Source: Macrostomum lignano (lineage: Eukaryota). Taken from it: a DNA stretch of 64,000 bases. Where the stretch lies: assembly GCA_002269645.1 (NCBI GenBank), contig NIVC01000206.1, positions 248,001 to 312,000 of the forward strand, in the 5' to 3' direction. The translations under genes and the position numbers were made by a program. This document shows positions 5,669 to 59,297 of this stretch, in pieces (positions within the stretch are counted from its first letter, which is position 1; each line of letters opens with the position of its first letter). The notes beneath the pieces are model-generated. The model made no database searches and was not told the DNA's origin. It was given only the letters and a program-made list of their open reading frames with translations.

Positions 5669-8600
5669 TCAACCTGATCTCCGACAGAAAAGCGTCTTAG
5701 CGGCGTAGCGCTGAAACACCCGGCTCAGACACCAGTAGAGGAAGGGGCAGGCGGCGCTGTGCAGGTAGACAAGAGCCTGCGAATAAGGATAGACGCTGGT
5801 GAGCACGGCTGCCAGATGCGGCCTATCCTGCAGCAGAAAATCCTGCAGCACAATAATCAGATCCTTGGGAAACCAACAGAAGAAGAACACGGCCACCAGT
5901 ACCACCACGGTGCGGACTGTTCGCTGCTGCAACACCCGGGCATGGTAGGCGGCCGTGGCGGCGGCGGCGGCGGCAGCGGGAGTCGGAGCCGGCCTGCAGT
6001 CCTCATCGTGCTGTCTGTCAATAAATGGCGTCTCAACGACTCTGAGCGACAGAGAAGCGACGGCCTCTGTAGCAGCCGATGGGGCCTGGATGGCGTGCCT
6101 CTGACGCTGCTGCTGCTGTTGTTGTTGTTGTTGTTGTTGTTGATGCCGGCCCCGCTGGGTCACCTGGTCAATGGGCCTACGGGAACGGTCTGACTGCAAC
6201 ATGGCACAGCCAGCCGTCAATGCCCCGCTCACCATAGGACAGGGGCCTTGCACCACCGCGTCGCCGCGTGAGTGTGCAGAGGGCATGTCGGTGAGCCTGC
6301 CACCAGGTCCACCAGGGTCAACCCCAGCAGAGGGGCCGGAATTCCAGCTTTCGTGTCCGTGGCCAACGGACCTTCCACCCCACGCCTGACAGTCCAGCAC
6401 TGGCGGCCAGCCCCGATGGGGTCTAGCCAGTGTCTGGAGCTGCTCGGAGGCCTGCTGGATGTGAGGCTGCTGCTGCTGTTGCTGCCCGCTGGCCAACCGA
6501 GCAAACTGGCGACTGATGAACCGGGCGGTGAACCCGTAGGAGAAGGCCAGGACAATGCACGGGGACAGGAACAGCATGAACAGAAAGTAGGCCGAGAACG
6601 CTTTCTGCACTGACTGACCGGTCGGGTAGCGCCGAAACTCCGAGCACAGGTACATCACTTGGCGGTTACCAATTTCGAACGGTAGAGTGGTCAGGTTTAC
6701 AATGTCCTTGACGAAGATTTCTTCAAGGGAGACGGCGAACAGGGCTGGGATGGAGGCCACAACGGCGCAAGCCCATATGGCCGCTGCCACCACGCGGTAA
6801 CCGCGCCCGCCGGCGGGGTCGGCGGAACAGCCCGATTGTCGAGGGCAGCGGCAGCGCTCTGGCGGGCTCGGACAATGGCGATAGAGGCCAGGGAGAAACT
6901 GTTCACGCTGAAGGCCAGGCCTAGAGCAGCACGGAGAAATAGCGTGCAATTAACCCAGCCATTCTAGCCCGCCCCCCTACACCGCAACCCCACAACCCAG
7001 AGATTCTAGCCCCCACCTCACATACACACACCGCAACCCCCAATTCCGTGCAATTAACCCAGCCATTCTAGCCCTCCACACCGCAACCCCCAATTCCGTG
7101 CAATTAACCCAGCCATTCTAGCCCTCCACACCGCAACCCCCAATTCCGTGCAATTAACCCAGCCATTCTAGCCCTCGACACCGCAACCCCCAATTCCGTG
7201 CAATTAACCCAGCCATTCTAGCCCTCCACACCGCAACCCCCAATTCCGTGCAATTAACCCAGCCATTCTAGCCCTCCACACCGCAACCCCAATTCCGTGC
7301 AATTAACCCAGCCATTCTAGCCCTCCACACCGCAACCCCCAATTCCGTGCAATTAACCCAGCCATTCTAGCCCTCCACACCGCAACCCCCAATTCCGTGC
7401 AATTAAACCCAGACATTCTGCCCCCCCCCCCCACACAGCAACTTCCAACCTTGTGCAATTAAACCCAGACATTCTGACCCCCACCCCACATACACACACC
7501 GCAACCCCCAATCCTGCGCAATTAAACCCAGACATTCTGACCCCCACCCCACATACACACACCGCAACCCCCAATCCTGTGCAATTAACCCAGCCATTAC
7601 GAGCTATAGCCCCGACAAACACACACCGCAACCCCCAAACCCCAATTTCCACCGCAAGCCAGATCGTCACAAGAATTGATATTTAAAATCAGAAACTAGT
7701 TCTACTACTACCATACGTAGCAAGCTTGGGATATCGAGATGTCAAGATTGCTCAATCGGCACTGAGTCTAATTAGTACTCGAGCCAAGAAAAAACTTCAG
7801 TGCTTGCAAATCAGGCTGTTCTCCACAGACGAGACGCTCTGATTTCATGCCTCATTAAGTCCTCCTTTTTCAACTTTTTCTAATCAGAACAGATCCCTGC
7901 GTGTCTCATTTACAATAAAAAGCTCCACGAGTTCTGCGCACATCTTGTAAAAATATTATAAAATATAAGAAGAGCTGAACTTGACATTGGAACTGAAAAA
8001 AGTCAAGTCAGAAATGTATTGAGACAAAAATTGGCACATCAATTTTGCTGGCTGAAAAGCCAGCTTATACCGAAATCGTGTATTGGCAATCGCTCTAGCT
8101 CACCCTTCCCGCAAATAGCTAGCAAGTTACATTGTCGGCTGATTTTCCATGCAAGAATGGCATTCTTGCACTCTTTTGCGTGCAGGAATGGATGTCTATG
8201 GTAAAATCTCACTGAAAAAGCATTAGGCGCAGAAATGCATTCCTGCACGGTTTTGTGCATTCCTGCACGATGAATCAGAATGAAAAAGCGATGCAACTCA
8301 ACCCCCCACCTTTCCCCCGGCACACACGCTGGCCAAGTTACCACAGGAACAAACTCACGTTGAGCCAATAGAAAAAATTAAAAAAAAATTAAAAAATCGG
8401 AGCATAACCTATTACTAATTTCCATTCGAACTACGCACATCCTTGGACTACCGAGAAATCTAGAAGACCGAAGACGAAAAATCTCACAAAATTTGTCCAA
8501 AAACAAAGAACGAATTTTTGTGATAAAGCCCACAAAAGAAATGGCTGCATTAAAATCGTCTGTGCTCACTACGACGACTGGTGGAAAAGGATGCCGTGTG

Positions 8601-18315: not shown

Positions 18316-21300
18316 TCAGTCAGTCTTCACATTAGCATAGATAGTTCTAACAAACAGGCTAGCGGCAAGGAAGCCAACAGCCCCGCAAATGAGAGCTAAG
18401 CCGGAGCAGAACAGAGCCATGAAACTAAAATAAAACGCAGTCTGATACAGGCCGTACATCCGAGTCTTGAAGAAGAAATAGTACACAGCGTAGACGTACA
18501 AATACACGGCCGTAGACGCGCCAGCCATAAAAGAACACCATTGCCAGCGATAGTCCTCGGAGTTCAATAAGAAATAGACGCACACAATAGTAACGCAGGC
18601 CGTGGCACAGAGTAGCAAGGCGAAAGCTAGAAAGCTAAATCCGTACACATAGTAGATTTTGTACGCCCAGAATGAGGTGAACACGTAGTACATTTCTACG
18701 AAAATTGAAGCGAACGGCAGTAGGCCGCCTAATAGGCAAATAATTAGCGGTTCCGCTAAGCAGTGACGCTTCTCGGGCAGTGGCCTGTAATTGACAGGGA
18801 GAGACTGTTAGCCATGGTTTCCCAGAGACAGTATCTGCAGTAGAAGGCTGTTAGCGATGATGGTTTCCACACACCTATAGGTTTAAACAAACTCTCTACG
18901 ATAAACCAAAATGGGATAAACACACCAAGATAAACCAAAATGGGATAAACACACCAAGATAAACCAAAATGGGATAAACACACCAAGATAAACCAAAATC
19001 GGATAAACACACCAAGATAAACCAAAATCGGATAAACACACCAAGATAAACCAAAATCGGATAAACACACCAAGATAAACCAAAATCGGATAAACACACC
19101 AATATAAACCAGAATAGGATAAACACACCAAGATAAAACAGAATAGGATAAACACACCAAGATAAACCAAAATCGGATAAACACACCAAGATAAACAAGA
19201 ATGGGATAAACACACCAAGATAAACCAAAATCGGATAAACACACCAATATAAACCAGAATAGGATAAACACACCAAGATAAACCAGAATAGGATAAACAC
19301 ACCAAGATAAACCACAATGGGATAAACACACCAAGATAAACCAGAATAGGATAAACACCTTAAGATAAACCAGAATAGGATAAACACACCAAGATAAACC
19401 ACAATGGGATAAACACACCAAGATAAACCACAATGGGATAAACACACCAAGATAAACAAGAATGGGATAAACGCACCAATATAAACCACAATGGGATAAA
19501 CACACCAAGATAAACAAGAATGGGATAAACACACCAATATAAACCACAATGGGATAAACACACCAAGATAAACCACAATGGGATAAACACACCAAGATAA
19601 ACAAGAATGGGATAAACACACCAAGATAAACCACAATGAGATAAACACACCAAGATAAACCAGAATGGGATAAACACACCAAGATAAACCAAAATCGGAT
19701 AAACACACCAAGATAAACAAGAATGGGATAAACACACCAAGATAAACCAGAATAGGATAAACACACCAAGATAAACCACAATGGGATAAACACACCAAGA
19801 TAAACCAGAATAGGATAAACACATCAAGATAAACCAGAATAGGATAAACACACCAAGATAAACCACAATGGGATAAACACACCAAGATAAACAAGAATGG
19901 GATAAACACACCAAGATAAACCACAATGGGATAAACACACCAAGATAAACCAAAATCGGATAAACACACCAAGATAAACCAGAATAGGATAAACACACCA
20001 AGATAAACCAGAATAGGATAAACACACCAAGATAAACCACAATGGGATAAACACACCAAGATAACCCAGAATAGGATTAACACATCAAGATAAACCAGAA
20101 TAGGATAAACACACCAAGATAAACCACAATGGGATAAGCGCACCAAGATAAACCACAATGGGATAAACACACCAAGATAAACAAGAATGGGATAAACACA
20201 CCAAGATAAACAAGAATGGGATAAACACACCAAGATAAACCACAATGGGATAAACACACCAAGATAAACCAGAATGGGATAAACACACCAAGATAAACCA
20301 AAATCGGATAAACACACCAAGATAAACAAGAATGGGATAAACACACCAAGATAAACCAAAATCGGATAAACACACTAAGATAAACAAGAATGGGATAAAC
20401 ATACCAAGATAAACCAGAATAGGATAAACACATCAAGATAAACCAGAATAGGATAAACACACCAAGATAAACCAGAATAGGATAAACACACCAAGATAAA
20501 CCAAAATCGGATAAATACACCAAGATAAACAAGAATGGGATAAACACACCAAGATAAACCAGAATAGGATAAACACATCAAGATAAACCAGAATAGGATA
20601 AACACACCAAGATAAACCAGAATAGGATAAACACACCAAGATAAATCACAATGGGATAAAGACACCAAGATAAACCAGAATAGGATAAACACACCAAGAT
20701 AAACCAGAATGGGATAAACACACCAAGATAAACCACAATGGGATAAACACACCATGATAAACAAGAATGGGATAAACACACCAATATAAACCACAATGGG
20801 ATAAACACACCAAGATAAACAAGAATGGGATAAACACACCAATATAAACCACAATGGGATAAACACACCAAGATAAACCAGAATAGGATAAACACATCAA
20901 GATAAACCAGAATAGGATAAACACACCAAGATAAACCAGAATAGGATAAACACACCAAGATAAATCACAATGGGATAAACACACCAAGATAAACCAGAAT
21001 AGGATAAACACATCAAGATAAACCAGAATAGGATAAACACACCAAGATAAACCAGAATAGGATAAACACACCAAGATAAATCACAATGGGATAAAGACAC
21101 CAAGATAAACCAGAATAGGATAAACACACCAAGATAAACCAGAATGGGATAAACACACCAAGATAAACCACAATGGGATAAACACACCATGATAAACAAG
21201 AATGGGATAAACACACCAATATAAACCACAATGGGATAAACACACCAAGATAAACAAGAATGGGATAAACACACCAATATAAACCACAATGGGATAAACA

Positions 21301-24300
21301 CACCAAGATAAACCAGAATAGGATAAACACATCAAGATAAACCAGAATAGGATAAACACACCAAGATAAACCAGAATAGGATAAACACACCAAGATAAAT
21401 CACAATGGGATAAACACACCAAGATAAACCAGAATAGGATAAACACACCAAGATAAACCAGAATGGGATAAACACACCAAGATAAACCAGAATGGGATAA
21501 ACACATCAAGATAAATCAGAATAGGATAAACACAATTAAATATGCAAGATACGAGTACTAGGATAAGCAAAACAAATCAGTATTAAACAGAAGGGACATA
21601 ACCCAGACCGCTCACCTGGGCACAGCATTGAGCCTGCAGGGCAGTTTAGAAGGCCGACCGCACAGATTCCTACCCAGCAGAGTGCCAATTAGGCTCAACG
21701 GTAGCAGAGCGAATGTGACAATAGCCAGCACTGATAGGCCTTGACTCGGCGTTAAGCTGCGCGACGAATGATAGCCCACAGCAACCAGGTTAACAGGGAA
21801 AGCCACGCCGCAGATCAGGCTGGGCGGCAGCAGAGCCTGAGCGACACCCTGACGAATCCAACGCGGAGACGCAGCCTGACCATTATTGCTACTACTACTA
21901 GTAGCAGTTGACGCTAAATAAAATCTCGAATATAAAGCTGCGCCAACGAATCCGCCGATAGGCGACGACGCCGAATAGAGGAAGATCGCGGCCGAGACCA
22001 GGCCGGCCCGTTCGCCGTTCATGTCGACGGACATGGCTAGCAGAATGAGGCACAATACTACAAAGGACAGCTGCACGCCCGACCCCACTAGGATGGAGAA
22101 GGTTGTCGGCTGCGCCGGTGGACGAAACACATCGCCGTACACCTGTGGGGGGAGATTTCGGTCCCGTGACAGGCTTTATTGGTACCTCAAGGGCGATCAT
22201 CCGATGGACAGGGGAATCTTAGGGGAGATTCTGTCAGGTGGGAATCTCATGGGGGAGATTCTCTCTCAGGTGGGACTCTCATAGGGGCAATTCTCTCTCA
22301 GGTGGGAGTCTCATAGCGGAGATTGTCTCTCTCAGGTGGGAGTCTCATAGCGGAGATTGTCTCTCTCAGGTGGGAACTCATAGTGGAGATTGTCTCTCTC
22401 TCAGGTGGGAGTCTCATAGTGGAGATTGTCTCTCTCTCAGGTGGGAGTCTCATAGTGGAGATTGTCTCTCTCTCAGGTGGGAGTCTCATATAGGGGAGAT
22501 TCTCTCTCAGATGGGAGTCTCATAGGGGAGATTCTCTCTGAGTTGGGAATCTCATAGGGGAGCTTCTCTCTCAGTTGGAAATCTCATAGGGGAGATTCTC
22601 TCTTAGGTGGGAGTCTCATAGGGAGCTTCTCTCTCAGTTGGGAGTCTCATAGGGGAGATTCTCTCTCAGGTGAAAGCTTCATAGGAGAGATTCTCTCAGG
22701 TGGACTCTCATAGGGGATTCTCTCAGATGGTACACCCCAATATCCCAGAGTGAAAAAACGAACCTGTTTCCAACCGAATTCGTCGCTAAAGCTCCGCTCC
22801 AGTTCCCATTGGCTTTCCTCGGCTCGGCTATACCTAGAGTAGTCACGTCTGAGCAGTCTGGTGAGCAGGAAAGCTACCAGGCACACTAGGAAAGCGGCCA
22901 TAGCGAAGCTGTTGCACAACGAGAACCAGTGAATGTGATGGTGAAAGAAGCTCGGGTCCAAGTACTTGTCAAAGCGTTTGTCGAACGGCACGTCCGACTG
23001 ACGGAAAATCACCTTTTTTATTTTTAGGGTGCGGGAGGGGCAGGTTTTGAAGGCTGGAAATTAATTGCATAAAAATTGTGACCGATGACTGTAAGACTCC
23101 GCTTAGTAGGAAAATGAAAATCTAATTTTGCTGAAATATCGATTGAGAAACCGGCATTAGACGATAATCTCGCTTTGGAGATTTATAAGATAGATAATTT
23201 CACCACGGATATTGACAGATAATTTCACCACGGATATTGACTGATAATTTCACCACGGATATTGACAGATAATTTCACCACGGATATTGACAGATAATTT
23301 CACCACGGATATTGACTGATAATTTCACCACGGATATTGACAGATAATTTCACCACGGATATTGACAGATAATTTCACCACGGATATTGACAGATAATTT
23401 CACCACGGATATTGACAGATAATTTCACCACGGATATTGACAGATAATTTCACCACGGATATTGACAGATAATTTCACCACGGATATTGACAGATAATTT
23501 CACCACGGATATTGACAGATAATTTCACCACGGATATTGACAGATAATTTCACCACGGATATTGACAGATAATCTCACCCTAGACATTACAGACTGGTGT
23601 TCCACCCCAAAGTTTATAGACTGATAATCTCACCCTAGACATTACAGACTGGTGTTCCACCCCAAAGTTTATAGACTGATAATCTCAGCCTAGAGATTAC
23701 AGACTGGTGTTCCACCCCAAAGTTTATAGACTGATAATCTCAGCCTAGAGATTACGGACTGGTGTTCCACCCCAAAGTTTATAGACTGATAATCTCAGCC
23801 TAGAGATTACAGACTGGTGTTCCACCCCAAAGTTTATAGACTGATAATCTCAGCCTAGAGATTACGGACTGGTGTCCCACCCTAGAGGTAAGAGACTGAT
23901 AATCTCACCCTAAATATTAGACTGATAATCTCACCCAAAAGGTAACAGACAGATAACCTCACCCCAGAGATAACGGACAGATAATCTCACCCAAGAGATA
24001 ACGGACAGATAATCTCACCCAAGAGATAACGGACAGATAATCTCACCCCAGAGAAAACGGACAGATAATCTCACCCGAGATAACGGACAGATAATCTCAC
24101 CCCAGAGAAAACGGACAGATAATCTCACCCGAGATAACGGACAGATAATCTCACCCCAGAGAAAACGGACAGATAATCTCACCCGAGATAACGGACAGAC
24201 AACCTCACCCAAGAGATAACGGACAGATAATCTCACCCCAGAGATAACGGACAGATAATCTAACCCTAGAAGAAACAGACAGATAATCTAACCCTAGAAG

Positions 24301-45762: not shown

Positions 45763-46553
<791 letters not shown>

Positions 46554-47059: not shown

Positions 47060-48035
<976 letters not shown>

Positions 48036-51719: not shown

Positions 51720-52232
<513 letters not shown>

Positions 52233-52828
52233 GTCTTTCGGTGTGACATCAGCATCAATCATCATCTATACATACTGGCTATGAAACCAGCTAAAGATTT
52301 TTTTTCAAGGATTCAAATCATGGTCACGTTGAACTCATACAAATAAAGCACAACAAGTTTCAAGTCTTTATAATTGTAGTAAAAATAAATAGCTTATGGG
52401 TGCAGTTTTTCGACTAAAATTGTTAACAAGCTCTACAAAAGTCTCAAAAAGAATTAAACTTATGATGTATCTATCTACTAAGGAAAGAATAAGGACTACA
52501 TGCACAAGATATCGACTGCTCTGAGCCGCAGCGCTGTTGCGGTAATCACGTGACTTTAAATTAAAATGTAATCGGATTGAAAGAGAAAAGGTGCCTATAA
52601 TCAAGTGTACGGGTAAGTTTCTATTTACGAGTACACTGTGCCAAATGAACATCAAGGTCCATAAAAAATATTTTATGTAAATAATTGCAAGAAGCATTCT
52701 GTCCATTCTGCTGACTCATGAATACATGCAAGCGCGCCAATGCTGTTACACAGACACGAACTCATGCACACGCTCTCACAGGGTGTACTGCTATGGGGGG
52801 GCGGAGTCATCAGGTGACGAATCTACAA

Positions 52829-52959
52829 GTTGCTGTTGTTGTTGATGATGTTGTCGTTGATGATGTTGTTTTTGTTGCTGTTGTTGTTGTTGTTGCTGCT
52901 GCTGTTTTTTTGCTGTTGTTGTTGTTGCTGCTGCTGTTGTTGTTGTTGTTGTTGGCGTT
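52829..52959 (-). repeat. (CAA)n/(CAG)n tract at the 3' end of the retrotransposon
   Basis: ttg/ctg/atg triplets on the plus strand. Confidence 0.95.
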
Positions 52960-52973
52960 GCCGTACCACGGTC

Positions 52974-54281
52974 CTACTCTCTCTTCAGTCTAACCCGTTC
53001 TCGGAACTCGTTCCAAAGGGCCCGGCATTCTTCGGGCATGGCGCATAAGTCACCCATCTCCGTGATGCCGGTCTTCCTCCTGATGTTGTCCATCACTGGG
53101 CACTTCAACAGTACGTGTTCCGTGCCTTCCTCCTCGAGATTGCACAGCCGGCACGTTCCACTCTCCCTGGCTCCAATCCGAGCACCATACTCCGCCAGCT
53201 CCGTGTGGTGTCCGGTCCTGAACCTGGCAAAATCGCGCCTGGCCGCTCTGCACCACTTTCCTTCCTTCCGCCAGTCCGGCTGCTTCTTCGCGTAGATTTC
53301 CTTCGCCCTCTCGTGCTTCCACTCCATCCTGCCTTCCAGGGCTCTACGAATGTGGTTAGTGGCCGCTTTCCTTGTCCAGACGTCACCTTCCTCGCCTCGT
53401 CCCTCTGCCGCCAGCCTGTCCGCCAGCTCATTTCCTTCCACTCCGACATGTCCTGCCACCCACTTCATCGTCAGGGTTCTTTCAGGCCACTTTGCGATCT
53501 TTAGCCAGCAATGCCTCACGTCCTGCCATTCACCCTTCCATCTGTCCTGGAAAGCCCGGAGCGCTGCTTGACTGTCACTCACGATGGTGGCCGTTTTCCA
53601 GTCTGCCGCGTCCAACCAATCGATTGCCATACGGAGTGCCCTGATCTCGGCTTGCGTGGACGAGCATCCCTGTCCCGCTGATCCTCGAGCTTCGCCCTGC
53701 TTCGTGCTGCCCCGGTAGATGATGAGACCAGCTCCACCTTTACCGTCCTTGCCCACCGACCCATCTGTGTACAGGATGTAGTCGGTGTCTCTGTTCGCGA
53801 TCCAGCTCTCTGCGGTTTCCTTGTTCTCTTTCTCGGTTGCCTGCCGGTTCGTGAGCTCCTCCAAGGCAACCTTAGTTCTGATTTGAACCCACGGTGGGAT
53901 TGGCCTGCTCCGCTCTTCCGGCTCCGGCTCCGGTAACGCCAGTCTGGTCCAGTCCTCGCGACACTTCTGCCTCCAGTTGGGCTTCTTCAGCCTCTTCTTC
54001 ATGCGCCTATTGGCCATCTCATTCCTAGGCGAGTCCGCTGGTAGCCGTCGGTAGCTATCATAGGTCTTCAGCGTCTGGAACTGCAGCCTGCTTTCCAGCG
54101 ATGGTAGCCCGGCTTCTTGCAGCACCATTTCCACCGGCGTGCTGGCCAGTACTCCGGCAATGGCTCTGGCGGCTGCCCGCTGGCACCTCTCCAGCTTCTC
54201 CAGGTGTACCTTGGCCAGCCATGGGTACCATGCCGGGGCCGCGTACTCCAGAATCGGTCTCACTAGCGCCAGGTAGGCCAA
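52974..54281 (-). CDS. Retrotransposon C-terminal part: post-RT region, RNase H, CCHC knuckle
   Basis: AYLALVRPILEY; YTDGS; WVAGHVGVEGNELAD; CRLCNLEEEGTEHVLLKC. Confidence 0.9.
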   Translation of the reverse strand: MAYLALVRPILEYAAPAWYPWLAKVHLEKLERCQRAAARAIAGVLASTPVEMVLQEAGLPSLESRLQFQTLKTYDSYRRLPADSPRNEMANRRMKKRLKKPNWRQKCREDWTRLALPEPEPEERSRPIPPWVQIRTKVALEELTNRQATEKENKETAESWIANRDTDYILYTDGSVGKDGKGGAGLIIYRGSTKQGEARGSAGQGCSSTQAEIRALRMAIDWLDAADWKTATIVSDSQAALRAFQDRWKGEWQDVRHCWLKIAKWPERTLTMKWVAGHVGVEGNELADRLAAEGRGEEGDVWTRKAATNHIRRALEGRMEWKHERAKEIYAKKQPDWRKEGKWCRAARRDFARFRTGHHTELAEYGARIGARESGTCRLCNLEEEGTEHVLLKCPVMDNIRRKTGITEMGDLCAMPEECRALWNEFRERVRLKRE

Positions 54282-56430: not shown

Positions 56431-58290
56431 CTTGGGGGGGGCTCGCCCTGTCTCCAGCACGATCCTAAACGGCAGGTCTTCTCTGACGAAAAAGGCCACT
56501 CCTCCCCCTCGGGCTTGCTCCCTATCCCTGTCTTTCCTGAGGATCCGGTATCCCGGCAGACTTGGTATCTTATCCTCTGCGCGAAGCTTCGTCTCTTGGA
56601 TCGCGATGATGTCTGCTTTCCATACTGCAGCCATGTTGTTCAATTCCGGCATCTTGGGGCTCAGTCCGTCGCAGTTCCACTGTATTATGGTGATCCTGTC
56701 TATCTTGGTCGTCTCCTTCTTCTTGCTCCCCAACTTCTCTTCCAACCTCTCTCCCTCGTTACTCTTGCAGTGTAGGCACATCCATCCTCCATGTTCCTTC
56801 CACCGCTTCACCAGCACCCTGCTGCTAGTGCCTGCGCATCCTTGGTGGACTTTGGCTCCGCACGAGTGGCACTCGAGGTTAGCTTTCCGTAGTCTGCCTC
56901 TGCACTCCGCGCACTGTCCCTTCAGTTCAGCCTTGGTCTGTTCTGGTCGTTCTTCGTCGGGCCGCTGCGGGGTGTCTTCCGTGACCTGACGATCCACAGC
57001 TCCGTCCTCATGCCTCGGGCACTTCCAGCTAGCCCATTTCTTTCTGCTACCGATCCGGAGCTGCGCAGCAGTAAGCTTAGCGCACTTAAGGTGGCACCAG
57101 CGTCTGCTCTCCGAGCACACCACGCTCCACTCCCTTCCGACCTTTTCCCCGCAGACGCAGCACGGCCACTCCGGGTGGTTGCTGTCTACATTGGCCATGG
57201 CCCTTCTTGGCTCCTTGGCCGCCTCCTTTGACTTCGCACTCTGTTCAACCTCCTCTCTCGTCCCCCCACTAGAGGGCGATCTCCGATCCTCCTTCTGGCT
57301 CCGTCTACGCGGCCGTAGCTCGATCACTTCGACTTCATCGGCGTGATATTCTTCGCCTTCTTCCTTTTTTCTCGGCTTCTCTATCCTGTTGCTTTCGCTG
57401 GCCAAGTCCGTGCATTCTCGACACATCCAGGTGGCGTTGGCTTTGGCGTACCTACTTCTCCCCGAGCATGCCGCATGTAGCAGCCCTTTGCAGCTCGGGC
57501 ACTTCAACGGCTTGTGTCTAGCCTGGAACGACGCTTTGCACTGCTTGCATCTTCCCTTGGCTTTGGCTGGAGTCGCCGGGGTAACCGTGCTGGGTTCTTC
57601 CTCTGGCCACCTGCCCGTGCAGCTCTTACACACCCACGTTACCGCGTCACGGAACTTACTCAGCTGCTTCCTCTGCTCCCCTGAACATTTCTGGTGATAT
57701 TCTTTACTGCAGTCCGCGCACTGTAGGCGTCTACTACCAGCCCTCAGCGTGGCTTGGCACGCCGCGCATTGTGTCTTGCTCGCCTTGGGGTCACACTTCT
57801 TACACCTCCATTCTCCTTTTCCTCTGCTGCACCTCTCGGCCTCGGTCCTCGACAACATGGTGCACCCCAGGTGGACGTTCGCGTTGCATTCACTGCACAC
57901 CACTCTCACACTCCTCAACTTCTTGCATTCCACGCACTTCGCCTCTTCTTCCTCCTCTTCACCCTTCGGCCCAGGGTTCTTCTCCACATCGCCGGCTTGT
58001 TCCAGTTGTCTCCACTTACTTCCGTCTGGGTCTGGGTTTTCGGCAACGTACTTCGGACCATGTTCGTAAGAGTGCCTGTTTTGTAGCCACTCCCTCAGGG
58101 CGCACCGCGTGAAGGTCTGGTCCCTAGCGCCGGGAGACGTGTGTCTCCCCTCCCGGTAGGCTCCGGGAGCCTGCTGCTGCTGTTGCTGCTGTTTTTGTTG
58201 TTGTTGTTGTTGATTGCGGAGTGCGGCTCCTTCAGATGGGGACCCAGCCGAGGGCACCCAGGAGCCGCGCCACCAAGTGACGATAGGCAA
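56431..58290 (-). CDS. Retrotransposon N-terminal part: leader, 2A peptide, five PHD fingers, start of APE
   Basis: LEQAGDVEKNPGP; C4HC3 repeats; ITIIQWNCDGL. Confidence 0.85.
57967..58020 (-). other. 2A/StopGo ribosomal skipping peptide (KWRQLEQAGDVEKNPG|P)
   Basis: Exact match to the D(V/I)ExNPGP consensus with the typical upstream L-x-Q-A-G. Confidence 0.85.
58055..58151 (-). ncRNA. Candidate HDV-like self-cleaving ribozyme
   Basis: Minus strand: P2 GGACCA/UGGUCC, P3 ACC/GGU, L3 UUCACGC, P1' GCGCCCU, P1.1 UC/GA, P4 GGGAGUG/CACUCUU, J4/2 ACGAA. The P1 5' strand is not contiguous. Confidence 0.65.
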
Positions 58291-58437
58291 GGTCGTGCTA
58301 GCCGATGGGACACTGGACGTCTCGGTTTCTGGCGCTCTTCGACACCCGATGGTCTGGGTGCCTCCCCTCCAAGACGAAGACGCGGCGCCGGGCAGGAGCT
58401 AAAGCCGGGGCTCCAGTTCGTCCGTAAAGGTCGACGG

Positions 58438-58616: not shown

Positions 58617-59297
58617 CTACTGAAGCTCAATAGTCAAGCTCTGTCTTCGCCTTCTTGTTGGTCTGAGCAACAGCAGCTGCATTTGCTCTTCGCGAGATTC
58701 AGCAGCAGAAGCAGCGCTGGGCTCTCTAAACTTAGCTCGCCGATTTTCTGCTGCAGATCTTCGCTGGGATTTTCGTCTGACCATCAGTTGCGTTGAAAAC
58801 TGAGCAATTGACAGGAGCAGCAGCAGGGCCAGCAGCAGGTCGCCGCCTCCTCCGGCGCTGTCAATCAAACCTGCCCGCACTGCTTCCAGAGTTGCTATGG
58901 CAACACCGTTCGACAGCCTGGTGAAGGGGAACATGTAGCGAGAGGGCACTCCGGTTGCTTCCTCGGAGGCCGCGTAGGCGAAGGTGTTGAAGCAGCCGAC
59001 TCCAATGCCGCAGGCTAGGGAGAAGGGCCACTGCAAGCTGCCGGGGTCGTTAAGTACACCTAGCCAGCCAATTAGAGAGCAGAGAACAGTAAGAGAGCCG
59101 AGCATGTACACCTGGATGTTTGCAGTTGGTGCTATTTGTCAGATTAATTCTGCTATAATCAACCAATGTGTAGTCATTCAATCAACCAATCAATCAATCA
59201 ATAAATTTATCAACGAATGAATCAATCAAAACAATTAATCAATCCATCAATCAATCAATCAGTCAATCGACCAATCAAACAAAACAATTAATTAATA

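What the first reader, a model, noticed from the sequence alone, without database searches (positions are those of the whole stretch)
58055..58151. HDV-like ribozyme at the retrotransposon 5' end with a hairpin inserted into P1
Seen in sequence (minus strand): GGACCAG-ACC-UUCACGC-GGU-GCGCCCU-GA-GGGAGUG..CACUCUU-ACGAA-CAUGGUCC. P3 (ACC/GGU) equals that of antigenomic HDV. L3 differs, but the P1.1 partner changes with it (UC/GA instead of CC/GG), and the catalytic C sits in a CGAA J4/2 at 58066. The oddity is P1. Its complement AGGGCGC exists only as AG (58151-58150) plus GGCGC (58131-58127), separated by a perfect hairpin GGGAGAC-ACAC-GUCUCCC. An upstream hairpin CUCCCGG/CCGGGAG also overlaps the predicted cleavage site. 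A second option is GUGGCGC near 58267-58273 (G-U wobble, one mismatch) with a long J1/2 across the CAA tract. HDV-like ribozymes at the 5' ends of L1Tc/ingi, R2 and RTE elements are established. A split-P1 or switchable version is my inference and I do not recognise it as described.
Basis: partly seen in the sequence, partly recalled or inferred. Interest (0 to 1): 0.85.

Follow-up and report, generated by a model that had tools for sequence, protein, structure and literature searches.

The report
HDV-like ribozyme with hairpin-split P1
A genuine HDV-type self-cleaving RNA sits at the front of a decayed animal retrotransposon, as in many such elements, but the helix that sets its cut site is interrupted by a conserved hairpin, and only a cleavage assay can show whether it still cuts.

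Summary
The sequence is as described. On the minus strand, 58124-58055 is a textbook HDV-like core: P2, P3, L3 UUCACGC, P1.1, P4 and J4/2 ACGAA with C58066. It lies about 60 nt upstream of a 2A peptide, at the 5' end of a degenerate 2A-PHD-APE-RT-RNase H non-LTR retrotransposon in an animal genome.

Five related 2A-bearing elements from public assemblies carry the same ribozyme in the same place. All five helices covary (98% of cells paired; 21 of 24 pairs with compensatory changes). The family is therefore real, although Rfam detects none of its members.

The P1 oddity is also real. Only GGCGC is contiguous with the core. The last two pairs (AG/CU) lie beyond a perfect 18-nt hairpin. Among relatives, three have an ordinary 6-bp P1, one has a mismatch and one a 1-nt bulge. 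The best-scoring relative (L001, core deleted) keeps the same hairpin and both flanks, with a compensatory stem change. The insertion is therefore lineage-wide, not a copy-specific accident.

Whether the split P1 forms and cleaves is unproven. Nearest-neighbour energies disfavour closing the junction (+2.8 kcal/mol).

Verdict: a genuine ribozyme of a known kind. The hairpin in P1 is a plausible new variant.

The parts
58171..58215 (-). (CAA)n(CAG)n tract immediately upstream of the element. It has the same repeat type as the element's 3' tail.
58150..58169 (-). Upstream hairpin CTCCCGG-AGCCTA-CCGGGAG. Its last two pairs use A58151 and G58150, the proposed first two P1 nucleotides.
58150..58151 (-). 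AG: proposed proximal two nucleotides of the P1 5' strand (pair with C58098 and U58097). The predicted cleavage site is 5' of A58151, or 5' of G58150 in the G.U register.
   Evidence: Read from sequence. Conserved in L001. Pairing not demonstrated.
58132..58149 (-). 18-nt perfect hairpin GGGAGAC-ACAC-GTCTCCC, inserted in the P1 5' strand.
   Evidence: -13.2 kcal/mol, z = -3.3. Homologous hairpin in L001 with pair 6 changed A-U to G-C, pair 7 changed C-G to U.G, and the loop fully changed.
58127..58131 (-). GGCGC: distal five nucleotides of the P1 5' strand (pair with 58103-58099).
58125..58126 (-). J1/2 (UA).
58117..58124 (-). P2 5' strand. 58123-58117 pair with 58062 and 58060-58055.
58104..58116 (-). 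P3 (ACC/GGU) enclosing L3 UUCACGC. U58113 and G58108 are the conserved L3 U...G. U58112 and C58111 form P1.1.
   Evidence: PMC3774820
58097..58103 (-). P1 3' strand GCGCCCU.
58095..58096 (-). J1/4 GA (P1.1 partners).
58068..58094 (-). P4 hairpin (7 bp, 13-nt loop).
58063..58067 (-). J4/2 ACGAA. C58066 is the candidate catalytic cytosine. The C and the two As are invariant in all six family members.
58055..58062 (-). P2 3' strand CAUGGUCC (A58061 bulged). It contains an ATG (58061-58059) that is one base out of frame with the 2A.
57967..57993 (-). 2A ribosome-skipping motif GDVEKNPGP.
   Evidence: PMC3708506
52974..57966 (-). Retrotransposon coding region, broken by at least three frameshifts. 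PHD-type fingers about 57768-57619; APE about 56685-55980; RT about 55124-54394; RNase H about 53786-53400; zf-RVT about 53183-53088; stop at 52974-52976.
52829..52954 (-). (CAA)n/(CAG)n 3' tail of the element.

Best explanation
The region 58151-58055 (minus strand) is the 5'-terminal HDV-like self-cleaving ribozyme of a 2A-PHD-APE-RT-RNase H non-LTR retrotransposon.

Proposed mechanism:
1. The element is transcribed as part of a longer read-through RNA.
2. The ribozyme folds into the nested double pseudoknot.
3. C58066 in J4/2 acts in catalysis and the RNA cuts itself at the 5' base of P1. This frees an element RNA with a 5'-OH.
4. The 2A motif about 60 nt downstream then frees the protein from whatever leader peptide was translated.

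In this lineage the P1 5' strand carries a conserved 18-nt hairpin between base pairs 2 and 3. P1 would then be a three-way junction: AG/CU + hairpin + GGCGC/GCGCC. The cut falls just 5' of A58151, or of G58150 in the G.U register.

Shown: the anatomy, the family-wide covariation of the core, and the conservation of the hairpin in one relative.
Inferred: that the split P1 forms, that cleavage occurs, where it occurs, and the read-through plus 2A logic.
For: 1. All core elements are present and canonical.

2. The same ribozyme sits upstream of the 2A in five related elements from unrelated assemblies: L017, L020, L021, L024 and L025.
- On a structure-registered alignment, 98.4% of cells pair. 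Shuffles give 59% and slid partners 32-48%.
- 21 of 24 pairs show double changes.
- L3 U1/A4/G6 and the J4/2 C..AA are invariant.

3. P1 3' GCGCCCU is matched by GGCGC two nucleotides before P2. It is completed exactly by the AG that abuts the hairpin, with no unpaired nucleotide at the junction.

4. L001, the best-scoring RT relative (43% identity), shares GAGGGGAG-N8-CTCCCGGCGC at the same spacing.
- 18 of 18 flank and stem-base positions are identical.
- 7 of the 8 apical positions differ, yet pairing is kept.
- The hairpin therefore predates the split of two divergent lineages.

5. Despite that age, the window's core is flawless. This argues that the core stayed under selection alongside the hairpin.

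6. Similarity between L001 and the window starts at G58152/A58151 and there is none upstream. That is what cleavage at this point would produce in progeny copies.

7. Precedent for loose P1 requirements: an active R2 ribozyme has a 4-nt P1 (PMC3774820).
Against: - No cleavage data exist.
- Closing the three-way junction with the AG/CU pairs costs +2.8 kcal/mol in the nearest-neighbour model. In this copy's context it costs +6.7, because the upstream hairpin holds A58151 and G58150.
- AG next to the hairpin would arise by chance about 1 time in 8.
- L001 has lost P2 5', P3 5', most of L3, J4/2 and P2 3'. Its P1 3' strand (GCCACCU) would mismatch GGCGC at two positions. It therefore gives no covariation across the split. 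It also shows that the hairpin can persist without the ribozyme.
- Strict sequence conservation of the flanks fits a protein- or DNA-level signal as well as it fits a helix strand.
- Single P1 mismatches are reported to abolish activity in other HDV-like ribozymes (PMC3774820).
- Relatives with a normal P1 show that the fold does not need the hairpin.
- The covariation alignment was registered by hand to the structure.
Confidence: 0.4

Rival explanations
1. The core is a genuine family ribozyme, but the hairpin-bearing version is catalytically dead or very slow. The hairpin with its conserved flanks would be a separate 5'-terminal element. It could be a binding site for the element's own protein, a promoter or initiator signal, or a translation element. 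The 5' end would be made in another way.
For: - L001 keeps the hairpin and flanks although its ribozyme core is deleted.
- The flanks are conserved in sequence (18/18), not merely in pairing.
- Energies disfavour the proximal P1 pairs.
- P1 defects often kill HDV-like ribozymes (PMC3774820).
- L1Tc sets a precedent for a dual-function 5' end, promoter plus ribozyme (PMC3383444).
Against: - The window's core shows no decay. All helices, P1.1 and the invariant nucleotides are intact, although the hairpin is old.
- GGCGC and AG are exactly what P1 needs.
- L001 is itself a dead copy with an in-frame stop, so its deletion may be private to that copy.
Confidence: 0.3
2. The ribozyme works with a short 5-bp P1 (GGCGC/GCGCC) and cuts between C58132 and G58131. 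The hairpin would be leader sequence that is cut off.
For: - The 5 bp are contiguous and sit at the family's normal distance from P2.
- A natural, active R2 ribozyme has a 4-nt P1 (PMC3774820).
Against: - C58098 and U58097 would be left unpaired between P1 and P1.1. This breaks the P1/P1.1 stack, and no family member has such a gap.
- The -1 nucleotide would be locked in a 7-bp helix.
- A hairpin removed by cleavage would not be inherited by progeny copies, yet it is conserved in L001.
Confidence: 0.1
3. P1 is formed with a distant upstream partner and a long structured J1/2 that contains the CAA/CAG tract and both hairpins. The candidates are GGGUGC at 58259-58254 (6 bp, one G.U) and the reader's GUGGCGC at 58273-58267.
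For: - The partners exist.
- J1/2 of hundreds of nucleotides is known in R2, and structured J1/2 domains are known in Agam-2 (PMC3774820; PMC4908430).
Against: - A 6-mer of this pattern is expected by chance within about 150-1000 nt.
- GUGGCGC has a mismatch at position 2.
- The nearby GGCGC would compete for the same strand.
- The 215-nt upstream block shows no similarity to the element or to L001.
Confidence: 0.05
4. Chance resemblance: there is no ribozyme here at all.
For: - Rfam gives no hit even at E <= 10.
- Shuffled sequence yields about 0.5 core-like hits per 128 kb.
Against: - The site is the only hit in the window and lies exactly in front of the element's 2A.
- Five relatives have the same fold in the same place, with covariation in every helix.
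- Rfam also misses the relatives whose structure is fully canonical.
Confidence: 0.03

Closest known systems
L1TcRz / Pr77 of Trypanosoma cruzi L1Tc (ingi clade)
   Same: - An HDV-like ribozyme occupies the very 5' end of an APE-RT-RNase H non-LTR element.
- That element also encodes an N-terminal 2A peptide.
- The proposed role is release of the element RNA from co-transcripts (PMC3185411, PMC3383444, PMC5814959; PMC3708506).
   Different: - The host here is an animal.
- PHD fingers lie between the 2A and APE.
- Sequence similarity to Pr77 was not tested.
- L1TcRz is described with an ordinary P1 and a promoter function. Here P1 is split by a hairpin, and promoter activity is unknown.
CPEB3 ribozyme (mammalian intronic HDV-like ribozyme)
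   Same: - Nested double pseudoknot.
- Its L3 is UUCACGU (primer sequence in PMC10919898). This is identical to L017 and 6/7 identical to the window's UUCACGC.
   Different: - CPEB3 lies in an intron of a host gene, not in a mobile element.
- Its P1 is contiguous.
- The Rfam search, whose library should include a CPEB3 model (from memory), returned no hit here.
R2, R4 and Dong retrotransposon ribozymes
   Same: - They process the 5' end of a non-LTR element from a co-transcript.
- P1 is the most plastic helix: 6-7 bp, mismatches at its top, and an active 4-nt P1 in Nasonia vitripennis.
- Dong sits in (TAA)n repeats and cuts at the repeat/element junction. The window's element is likewise flanked by (CAA)n/(CAG)n (PMC3774820).
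   Different: - These elements have a restriction-like endonuclease and no 2A.
- The plasticity described is in length, mismatches and the origin of the 5' strand. A helix inserted inside P1 is not among the variations described in the passages read.
drz-Agam-2 type ribozymes with a P1.2 peripheral hairpin
   Same: An extra hairpin is attached to the strand that leaves P1. It is shown to tune activity by up to about 1000-fold (PMC4908430).
   Different: - P1.2 lies in J1/2, after a complete P1, at the distal ends of P1 and P2.
- Here the hairpin lies inside the P1 5' strand, two pairs from the cleavage site. Five more P1 pairs follow it.

Membership tests
HDV-like self-cleaving ribozymes | Nested double pseudoknot with helices in the order P1-P2-P3-L3-P3'-P1'-P1.1-P4-J4/2-P2' | tested here: met
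   All strands are present in the right order. It is the single descriptor hit in the window.
HDV-like self-cleaving ribozymes | Helices supported by covariation among homologues | tested here: met
   Six sequences: 98.4% of cells paired against 59% in shuffles, and 21 of 24 pairs with changes on both sides. Caveat: the alignment was registered by hand.
HDV-like self-cleaving ribozymes | Catalytic cytosine in J4/2, followed by purine-rich nucleotides and then P2' | tested here: met
   C58066 lies in ACGAA. The C and the AA are invariant in all six members.
HDV-like self-cleaving ribozymes | Conserved L3 U and G (reverse wobble), 3-bp G+C-rich P3 and 1-2 bp P1.1 | tested here: met
   L3 is UUCACGC, with U1 and G6 invariant in the family. 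P3 is ACC/GGU. P1.1 is UC/GA and covaries with GC/GC (PMC3774820).
HDV-like self-cleaving ribozymes | A 6- or 7-bp P1 whose first nucleotide is the cleavage site | tested here: inconclusive
   Only 5 bp are contiguous. Seven pairs are possible only across an 18-nt hairpin. Closing that junction is disfavoured by +2.8 kcal/mol. Relatives have a 6-bp P1, or a 7-bp P1 with one bulge. The norm is taken from PMC4908430.
HDV-like self-cleaving ribozymes | Mg2+-dependent site-specific self-cleavage giving a 5'-OH and a 2',3'-cyclic phosphate | not testable with these tools
   Needs an in vitro transcription and cleavage assay.
HDV-like self-cleaving ribozymes | Match to a curated Rfam covariance model of the clan | tested here: not met
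   No hit at the gathering score or at E <= 10. The fully canonical relatives are missed as well, so this reflects how narrow the models are.
2A-encoding APE-type non-LTR retrotransposons (ingi-like layout) | APE, RT and RNase H domains in one direction, a D(V/I)ExNPGP motif at the N-terminus, and a simple-repeat tail | tested here: met
   Pfam hits to PHD, Exo_endo_phos, RVT_1, RNase_H and zf-RVT. GDVEKNPGP lies at 57993-57967. The (CAA)n tail is seen. Clade assignment by RT phylogeny was not done.
2A-encoding APE-type non-LTR retrotransposons (ingi-like layout) | Pr77 hallmark sequence of the trypanosomatid L1Tc/ingi group | not tested
HDV-like ribozymes with a J1/2 peripheral domain (P1.2) | The extra hairpin lies between the end of a complete P1 5' strand and P2 | tested here: not met
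   The hairpin (58149-58132) is followed by five more P1 nucleotides (58131-58127) before the 2-nt J1/2.

The most novel reading that the evidence does not exclude
A natural HDV-like ribozyme whose substrate helix P1 is a three-way junction. A hairpin conserved across divergent retrotransposon lineages sits two base pairs from the scissile bond. It stays on the 5' end of the cleaved RNA. It would then serve both as part of the ribozyme (a folding gate that sets when P1 can close) and as a 5'-terminal signal of the element RNA.
Probability: 0.3. Interest if true: 0.7.

Novelty: new variant of a known kind. Interest (0 to 1): 0.5.

Why it matters
First, the result links two known 5' devices of non-LTR retrotransposons outside trypanosomes: an HDV-like ribozyme and an N-terminal 2A peptide.
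- In at least five animal-type elements the ribozyme lies directly upstream of the 2A.
- This suggests a conserved module. The ribozyme cuts off upstream RNA and the 2A cuts off upstream peptide, which suits elements expressed from read-through transcripts.
- The paper that catalogued these 2A elements does not mention ribozymes (PMC3708506).
- Rfam does not detect this ribozyme group.

Second, if the split P1 is active, it would widen the known tolerance of the HDV fold at its most sensitive helix. It would also give a natural case of a helix inserted next to the cleavage site. That is of interest for ribozyme folding, for annotation descriptors that demand a contiguous P1, and for engineered switches.

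If the split P1 is inactive, the conserved hairpin marks an unrecognised 5'-end signal of this retrotransposon lineage.

Tried and rejected
- Rfam scans of the window, of the 400-nt region at E <= 10, and of seven related loci gave no ribozyme hit.
- The first protein search, with the whole 675-aa ORF, found nothing. The poly-Q and poly-E stretches probably swamped the word index.
- A loose HDV descriptor gave dozens of spurious hits and at first missed the candidate because of the P2 bulge. It was replaced by stricter versions.
- Thirteen metagenome loci with APE relatives (L003-L015) have no 2A and no convincing ribozyme.
- L016, L018, L019, L022 and L023 are 5'-truncated or lack a 2A and ribozyme.
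- MAFFT alone misaligned the six ribozymes. An N-padded, structure-registered alignment was used instead.
- The covariance model R1 found only its own training sequences and nothing new.
- The genome-contig scan for the hairpin motif returned more than 120 chance matches in G+C-rich bacteria. None had a core beside it. The single viral contigs match also had no core beside it.
- The 215-nt block between the two CAA tracts was tested as a second ribozyme copy or as a truncated 3' end of the element. There was no significant similarity and no tRNA-like gene.
- Alternative helices are much less stable than the two-hairpin fold. These were CUCCC/GGGAG and CCGGGAG with the second CUCCCGG.
- The papers by Webb et al. 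2009 and Ruminski et al. 2011 are not held. I could not check whether sea-urchin or amphioxus ribozymes described there belong to this group.
Full report
**1. The observation**

- P1 proximal 5' strand: AG, 58151-50.
- Inserted hairpin: GGGAGAC-ACAC-GTCTCCC, 58149-58132.
- P1 distal 5' strand: GGCGC, 58131-27.
- J1/2: UA.
- P2 5' strand: 58124-17.
- P3: ACC/GGU.
- L3: UUCACGC, 58113-07.
- P1 3' strand: GCGCCCU, 58103-097.
- J1/4: GA. It pairs with U58112 and C58111 as P1.1.
- P4: a 7-bp stem, 58094-68.
- J4/2: ACGAA, with C58066.
- P2 3' strand: CAUGGUCC, 58062-55, with A58061 bulged.

The upstream hairpin (58169-58150) and the alternative partner GUGGCGC (58273-67, mismatch at position 2) are also present.

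**2. The setting**

The ribozyme lies at the head of a minus-strand non-LTR retrotransposon running from about 58170/58151 down to 52829.
- A 2A motif, GDVEKNPGP, lies at 57993-57967.
- It is followed by several PHD-type fingers, an APE endonuclease, reverse transcriptase, RNase H and a zf-RVT finger.
- The element ends in a (CAA)n/(CAG)n tail at 52954-52829.
- The reading frame is broken at least three times, so this copy is dead.
- A tract of the same repeat type lies just upstream (58215-58171) and another at 58540-58437.
- The genome is an animal's. There is a rhodopsin-type receptor ORF at 5669-6949, and the element's relatives are annotated in molluscs, spiders and crustaceans.
- Odon et al. 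place 2A sequences at the N-terminus of ORF2 in several metazoan non-LTR clades, sometimes with a PHD domain before APE (PMC3708506).
- The RNase H domain points to an ingi-like element. That is my inference; no RT phylogeny was made.

**3. Chance**

- Rfam finds nothing, even at E <= 10.
- A semi-strict core descriptor ignores the P1 5' strand and the L3 sequence. It hits the 128 kb of both strands once, at this site.
- Block-wise dinucleotide shuffles give 0.47 hits per 128 kb. That is about 0.001 for the roughly 300 nt in front of the ORF.

**4. Relatives**

No close copy exists in the window or in the protein collection. The best RT hits are 43-54% identical. Two more protein searches and twelve contig look-ups recovered related elements, and many of their proteins begin with a 2A.

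Five of these elements carry an HDV-like ribozyme between the flanking DNA and the 2A.

| Locus | P1 (5'/3') | P2 (5'/3') | P3 (5'/3') | L3 | J1/4 | J4/2 |
|---|---|---|---|---|---|---|
| L017 5493-5570 | GCGG(A)GAC / GUCCCGC | CCGGA / UCCGG | ACC / GGU | UUCACGU | GA | CGAA |
| L020 258-318 | GGAUCU / GGAUCU | GCAGCU / GGCUGC | GGG / CCC | UUUAUGC | AU | CAAA |
| L021 119-195 | GGUCCA / UGGACU | GCACCA / UGGUGC | GCG / CGU | UGCACGC | GC | CAAA |
| L024 10-74 | GGUUGC / GCAACC | AAGAG(A)G / CCUCUU | GCC / GGU | UUCAUGU | GA | CAAA |
| L025 3034-3104 | (U)GUUCC / GGAACC | GACUCC / GGAGUC | GCC / GGU | UGCACGU | GC | CAAA |

I built a structure-registered alignment: loops masked, and the window's hairpin, L017's bulged A and the P2 bulges removed. 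The pair count on it gives:
- 98.4% of cells form standard pairs, against 59% in shuffles and 32-48% when partners are slid;
- 21 of 24 pairs change on both sides;
- every helix covaries, including P1 and P1.1.

L3 U1, A4 and G6, the J4/2 C, and the two As are invariant. The L3 U and G are the conserved reverse-wobble pair of HDV-like ribozymes (PMC3774820). L3 UUCACGU is also the CPEB3 L3.

The alignment was fitted by hand, which inflates the numbers. Six independent sequences that satisfy a double pseudoknot at the same place in homologous elements are nonetheless hard to explain otherwise. Rfam misses all of them. A model built from them finds only the one site in the window.

**5. P1**

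The family norm is a contiguous 6-bp P1 with 1-3 nt of J1/2 (L020, L021, L024). L025 has one mismatch. L017 has a 7-nt 3' strand matched across a single bulged A.

The window also has a 7-nt 3' strand.
- Five of its nucleotides are matched by GGCGC, at the normal distance from P2.
- The remaining C58098 and U58097 can pair only with G58150 and A58151, on the far side of the 18-nt hairpin.
- A G.U-first register (G58150.U58097, G58149-C58098, C58132 bulged) is also possible.
- No perfect contiguous partner lies within 2 kb upstream. Only 6-mers are found, such as GGGUGC at 58259.

The hairpin is not a private accident. L001 is the contig of the best-scoring RT relative.
- It has GAGGGGAG-N8-CTCCCGGCGC at the same spacing, just upstream of its own 2A.
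- The 18 flank and stem-base positions are identical and 7 of the 8 apical positions differ.
- The stem is nevertheless kept: pair 6 changes A-U to G-C and pair 7 changes C-G to U.G.
- Similarity between the two loci begins at G58152/A58151 and there is none upstream.

L001 has, however, lost the stretch from P2 5' to L3 and the stretch from P4 to P2 3'. MAFFT places a deletion between two CGC triplets. Its P1 3' strand reads GCCACCU. It cannot therefore test pairing across the split, and it shows the hairpin surviving without the ribozyme.

**6. Energetics**

- The hairpin is very stable: -13.2 kcal/mol, z = -3.3.
- In the nearest-neighbour model, adding the AG/CU pairs to close the three-way junction costs +2.8 kcal/mol.
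- With this copy's upstream hairpin, which uses A58151 and G58150 for its last two pairs, the cost is +6.7 kcal/mol.
- These models ignore pseudoknots and tertiary contacts, and the upstream context of a dead insertion may be irrelevant to the master copy.
- They still count against easy formation of the proximal pairs.

**7. Weighing the models**

*Split P1, active.* This is favoured by four points.
- The AG, the hairpin and GGCGC fit together with no unpaired nucleotide.
- The core is intact in a lineage where the hairpin is old.
- The boundary of homology with L001 falls at the predicted cut.
- A hairpin upstream of the cut would not be inherited, whereas one downstream of it would.

*Ribozyme crippled, hairpin as an independent 5' signal.* This is favoured by L001, by the sequence-level conservation of the flanks and by the energies.

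*5-bp P1 with the cut at 58132/58131.* There is a precedent in the active 4-nt P1 of Nasonia R2 (PMC3774820). However, it leaves two unpaired nucleotides between P1 and P1.1, and it predicts loss of the hairpin from progeny.

*Distant P1 partner.* This has no support beyond a 6-mer that is expected by chance.

I put the models at about 0.40, 0.30, 0.10 and 0.05, and chance resemblance at about 0.03. The remainder covers cases I have not thought of.

**8. Comparison with what is known**

- HDV-like ribozymes at the 5' ends of R2, R4/Dong, RTE, baggins and L1Tc are established (PMC3774820; PMC3185411).
- L1Tc combines such a ribozyme with a 2A.
- P1 is described as 6-7 bp (PMC4908430).
- Known extra hairpins (P1.2) sit in J1/2, after a complete P1. 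Here five P1 pairs follow the hairpin, so that description does not fit.
- None of the passages I read describes a helix inside P1. The two key survey papers are not held, so absence from the literature is not proven.

**9. Verdict**

This is a real member of a known ribozyme class, in an element type where the ribozyme-2A pairing seems not to have been pointed out for animals. Its P1 architecture is unusual and shared by its lineage, and its activity is untested.

Noticed in passing
window 58055-57967 (minus strand): There is no in-frame ATG between the ribozyme and the 2A. The only nearby ATG (58061-58059, inside the P2 3' strand) is one base out of frame and opens a 48-codon frame. In the relatives (L017, L020, L021, L024) an in-frame ATG lies 18-34 codons upstream of NPGP. 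The 2A frame in the window stays open back through the ribozyme to 58290. This could be a private indel, or translation could start without AUG.
   Followed up: partly
window 58170-58153, compared with a primer in PMC3774820: The 5' end of silkmoth Dong, as given in a primer after (TAA)7, reads GCTCCCTAAAATCCTACC. The window reads GCTCCCGGAGCCTACC right after its (CAG)n tract. Both are repeat-flanked elements with 5' HDV-like ribozymes. This may be coincidence.
   Followed up: no
window 58169-58163, 58156-58150 and 58136-58130: CTCCCGG occurs twice, and CCGGGAG between the two copies is complementary to both. The 19 nt between the CAG tract and A58151 could therefore be a template-switch product made at integration, or part of an alternative pairing scheme. 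The alternative helix is much weaker than the two-hairpin fold.
   Followed up: partly
L001 nt 36-69: L001 can form a second, mutually exclusive and stronger hairpin: GGAGGUGGU-A-GCC...GGU-GCCACCUCC (9 + 3 bp). This places the conserved CUCCCGGCGC in its loop. L001 also has an in-frame TAG at 858-860, so it is a dead copy.
   Followed up: partly
window 58216-58436 (minus strand): A 215-nt unique block lies between two (CAA)n tracts. It is not similar to the element's 5' or 3' end and is not tRNA-like. It could be a short non-autonomous element that uses the same tail.
   Followed up: partly
whole window: The density of mini- and microsatellites is very high: 49 TRF rows at score >= 200. Examples are a 29-nt unit x 91 at 18900-21534, (CTGT)n at 47062-48035 and 51720-52236, and a 9-nt unit CTCCCCTGT x 68 at 45827-46441. 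The complement of that 9-nt unit resembles the hairpin arm GGGGAGAC.
   Followed up: no
window 5669-6949 (minus strand): An ORF with a rhodopsin-family 7TM receptor domain (Pfam 7tm_1, E = 2.7e-13). It was used only to infer an animal host.
   Followed up: no
window 58617-59111 (minus strand): A 164-aa ORF directly upstream of the CAA tract. It has a leucine-rich stretch that looks hydrophobic and no Pfam hit. It may be the 3' exon of a host gene whose read-through could transcribe the element.
   Followed up: no
L018 1074-1157 (minus strand): A weak let-7-like hairpin: 30.5 bits against a gathering score of 53.5, E = 0.032. Probably chance.
   Followed up: no
proteins P0037-P0113: Twenty of the 102 APE relatives begin with a 2A-type NPGP motif. 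Several ORFs extend 50-90 residues upstream of it, so gene callers read through the probable ribozyme region, as happens in the window.
   Followed up: partly
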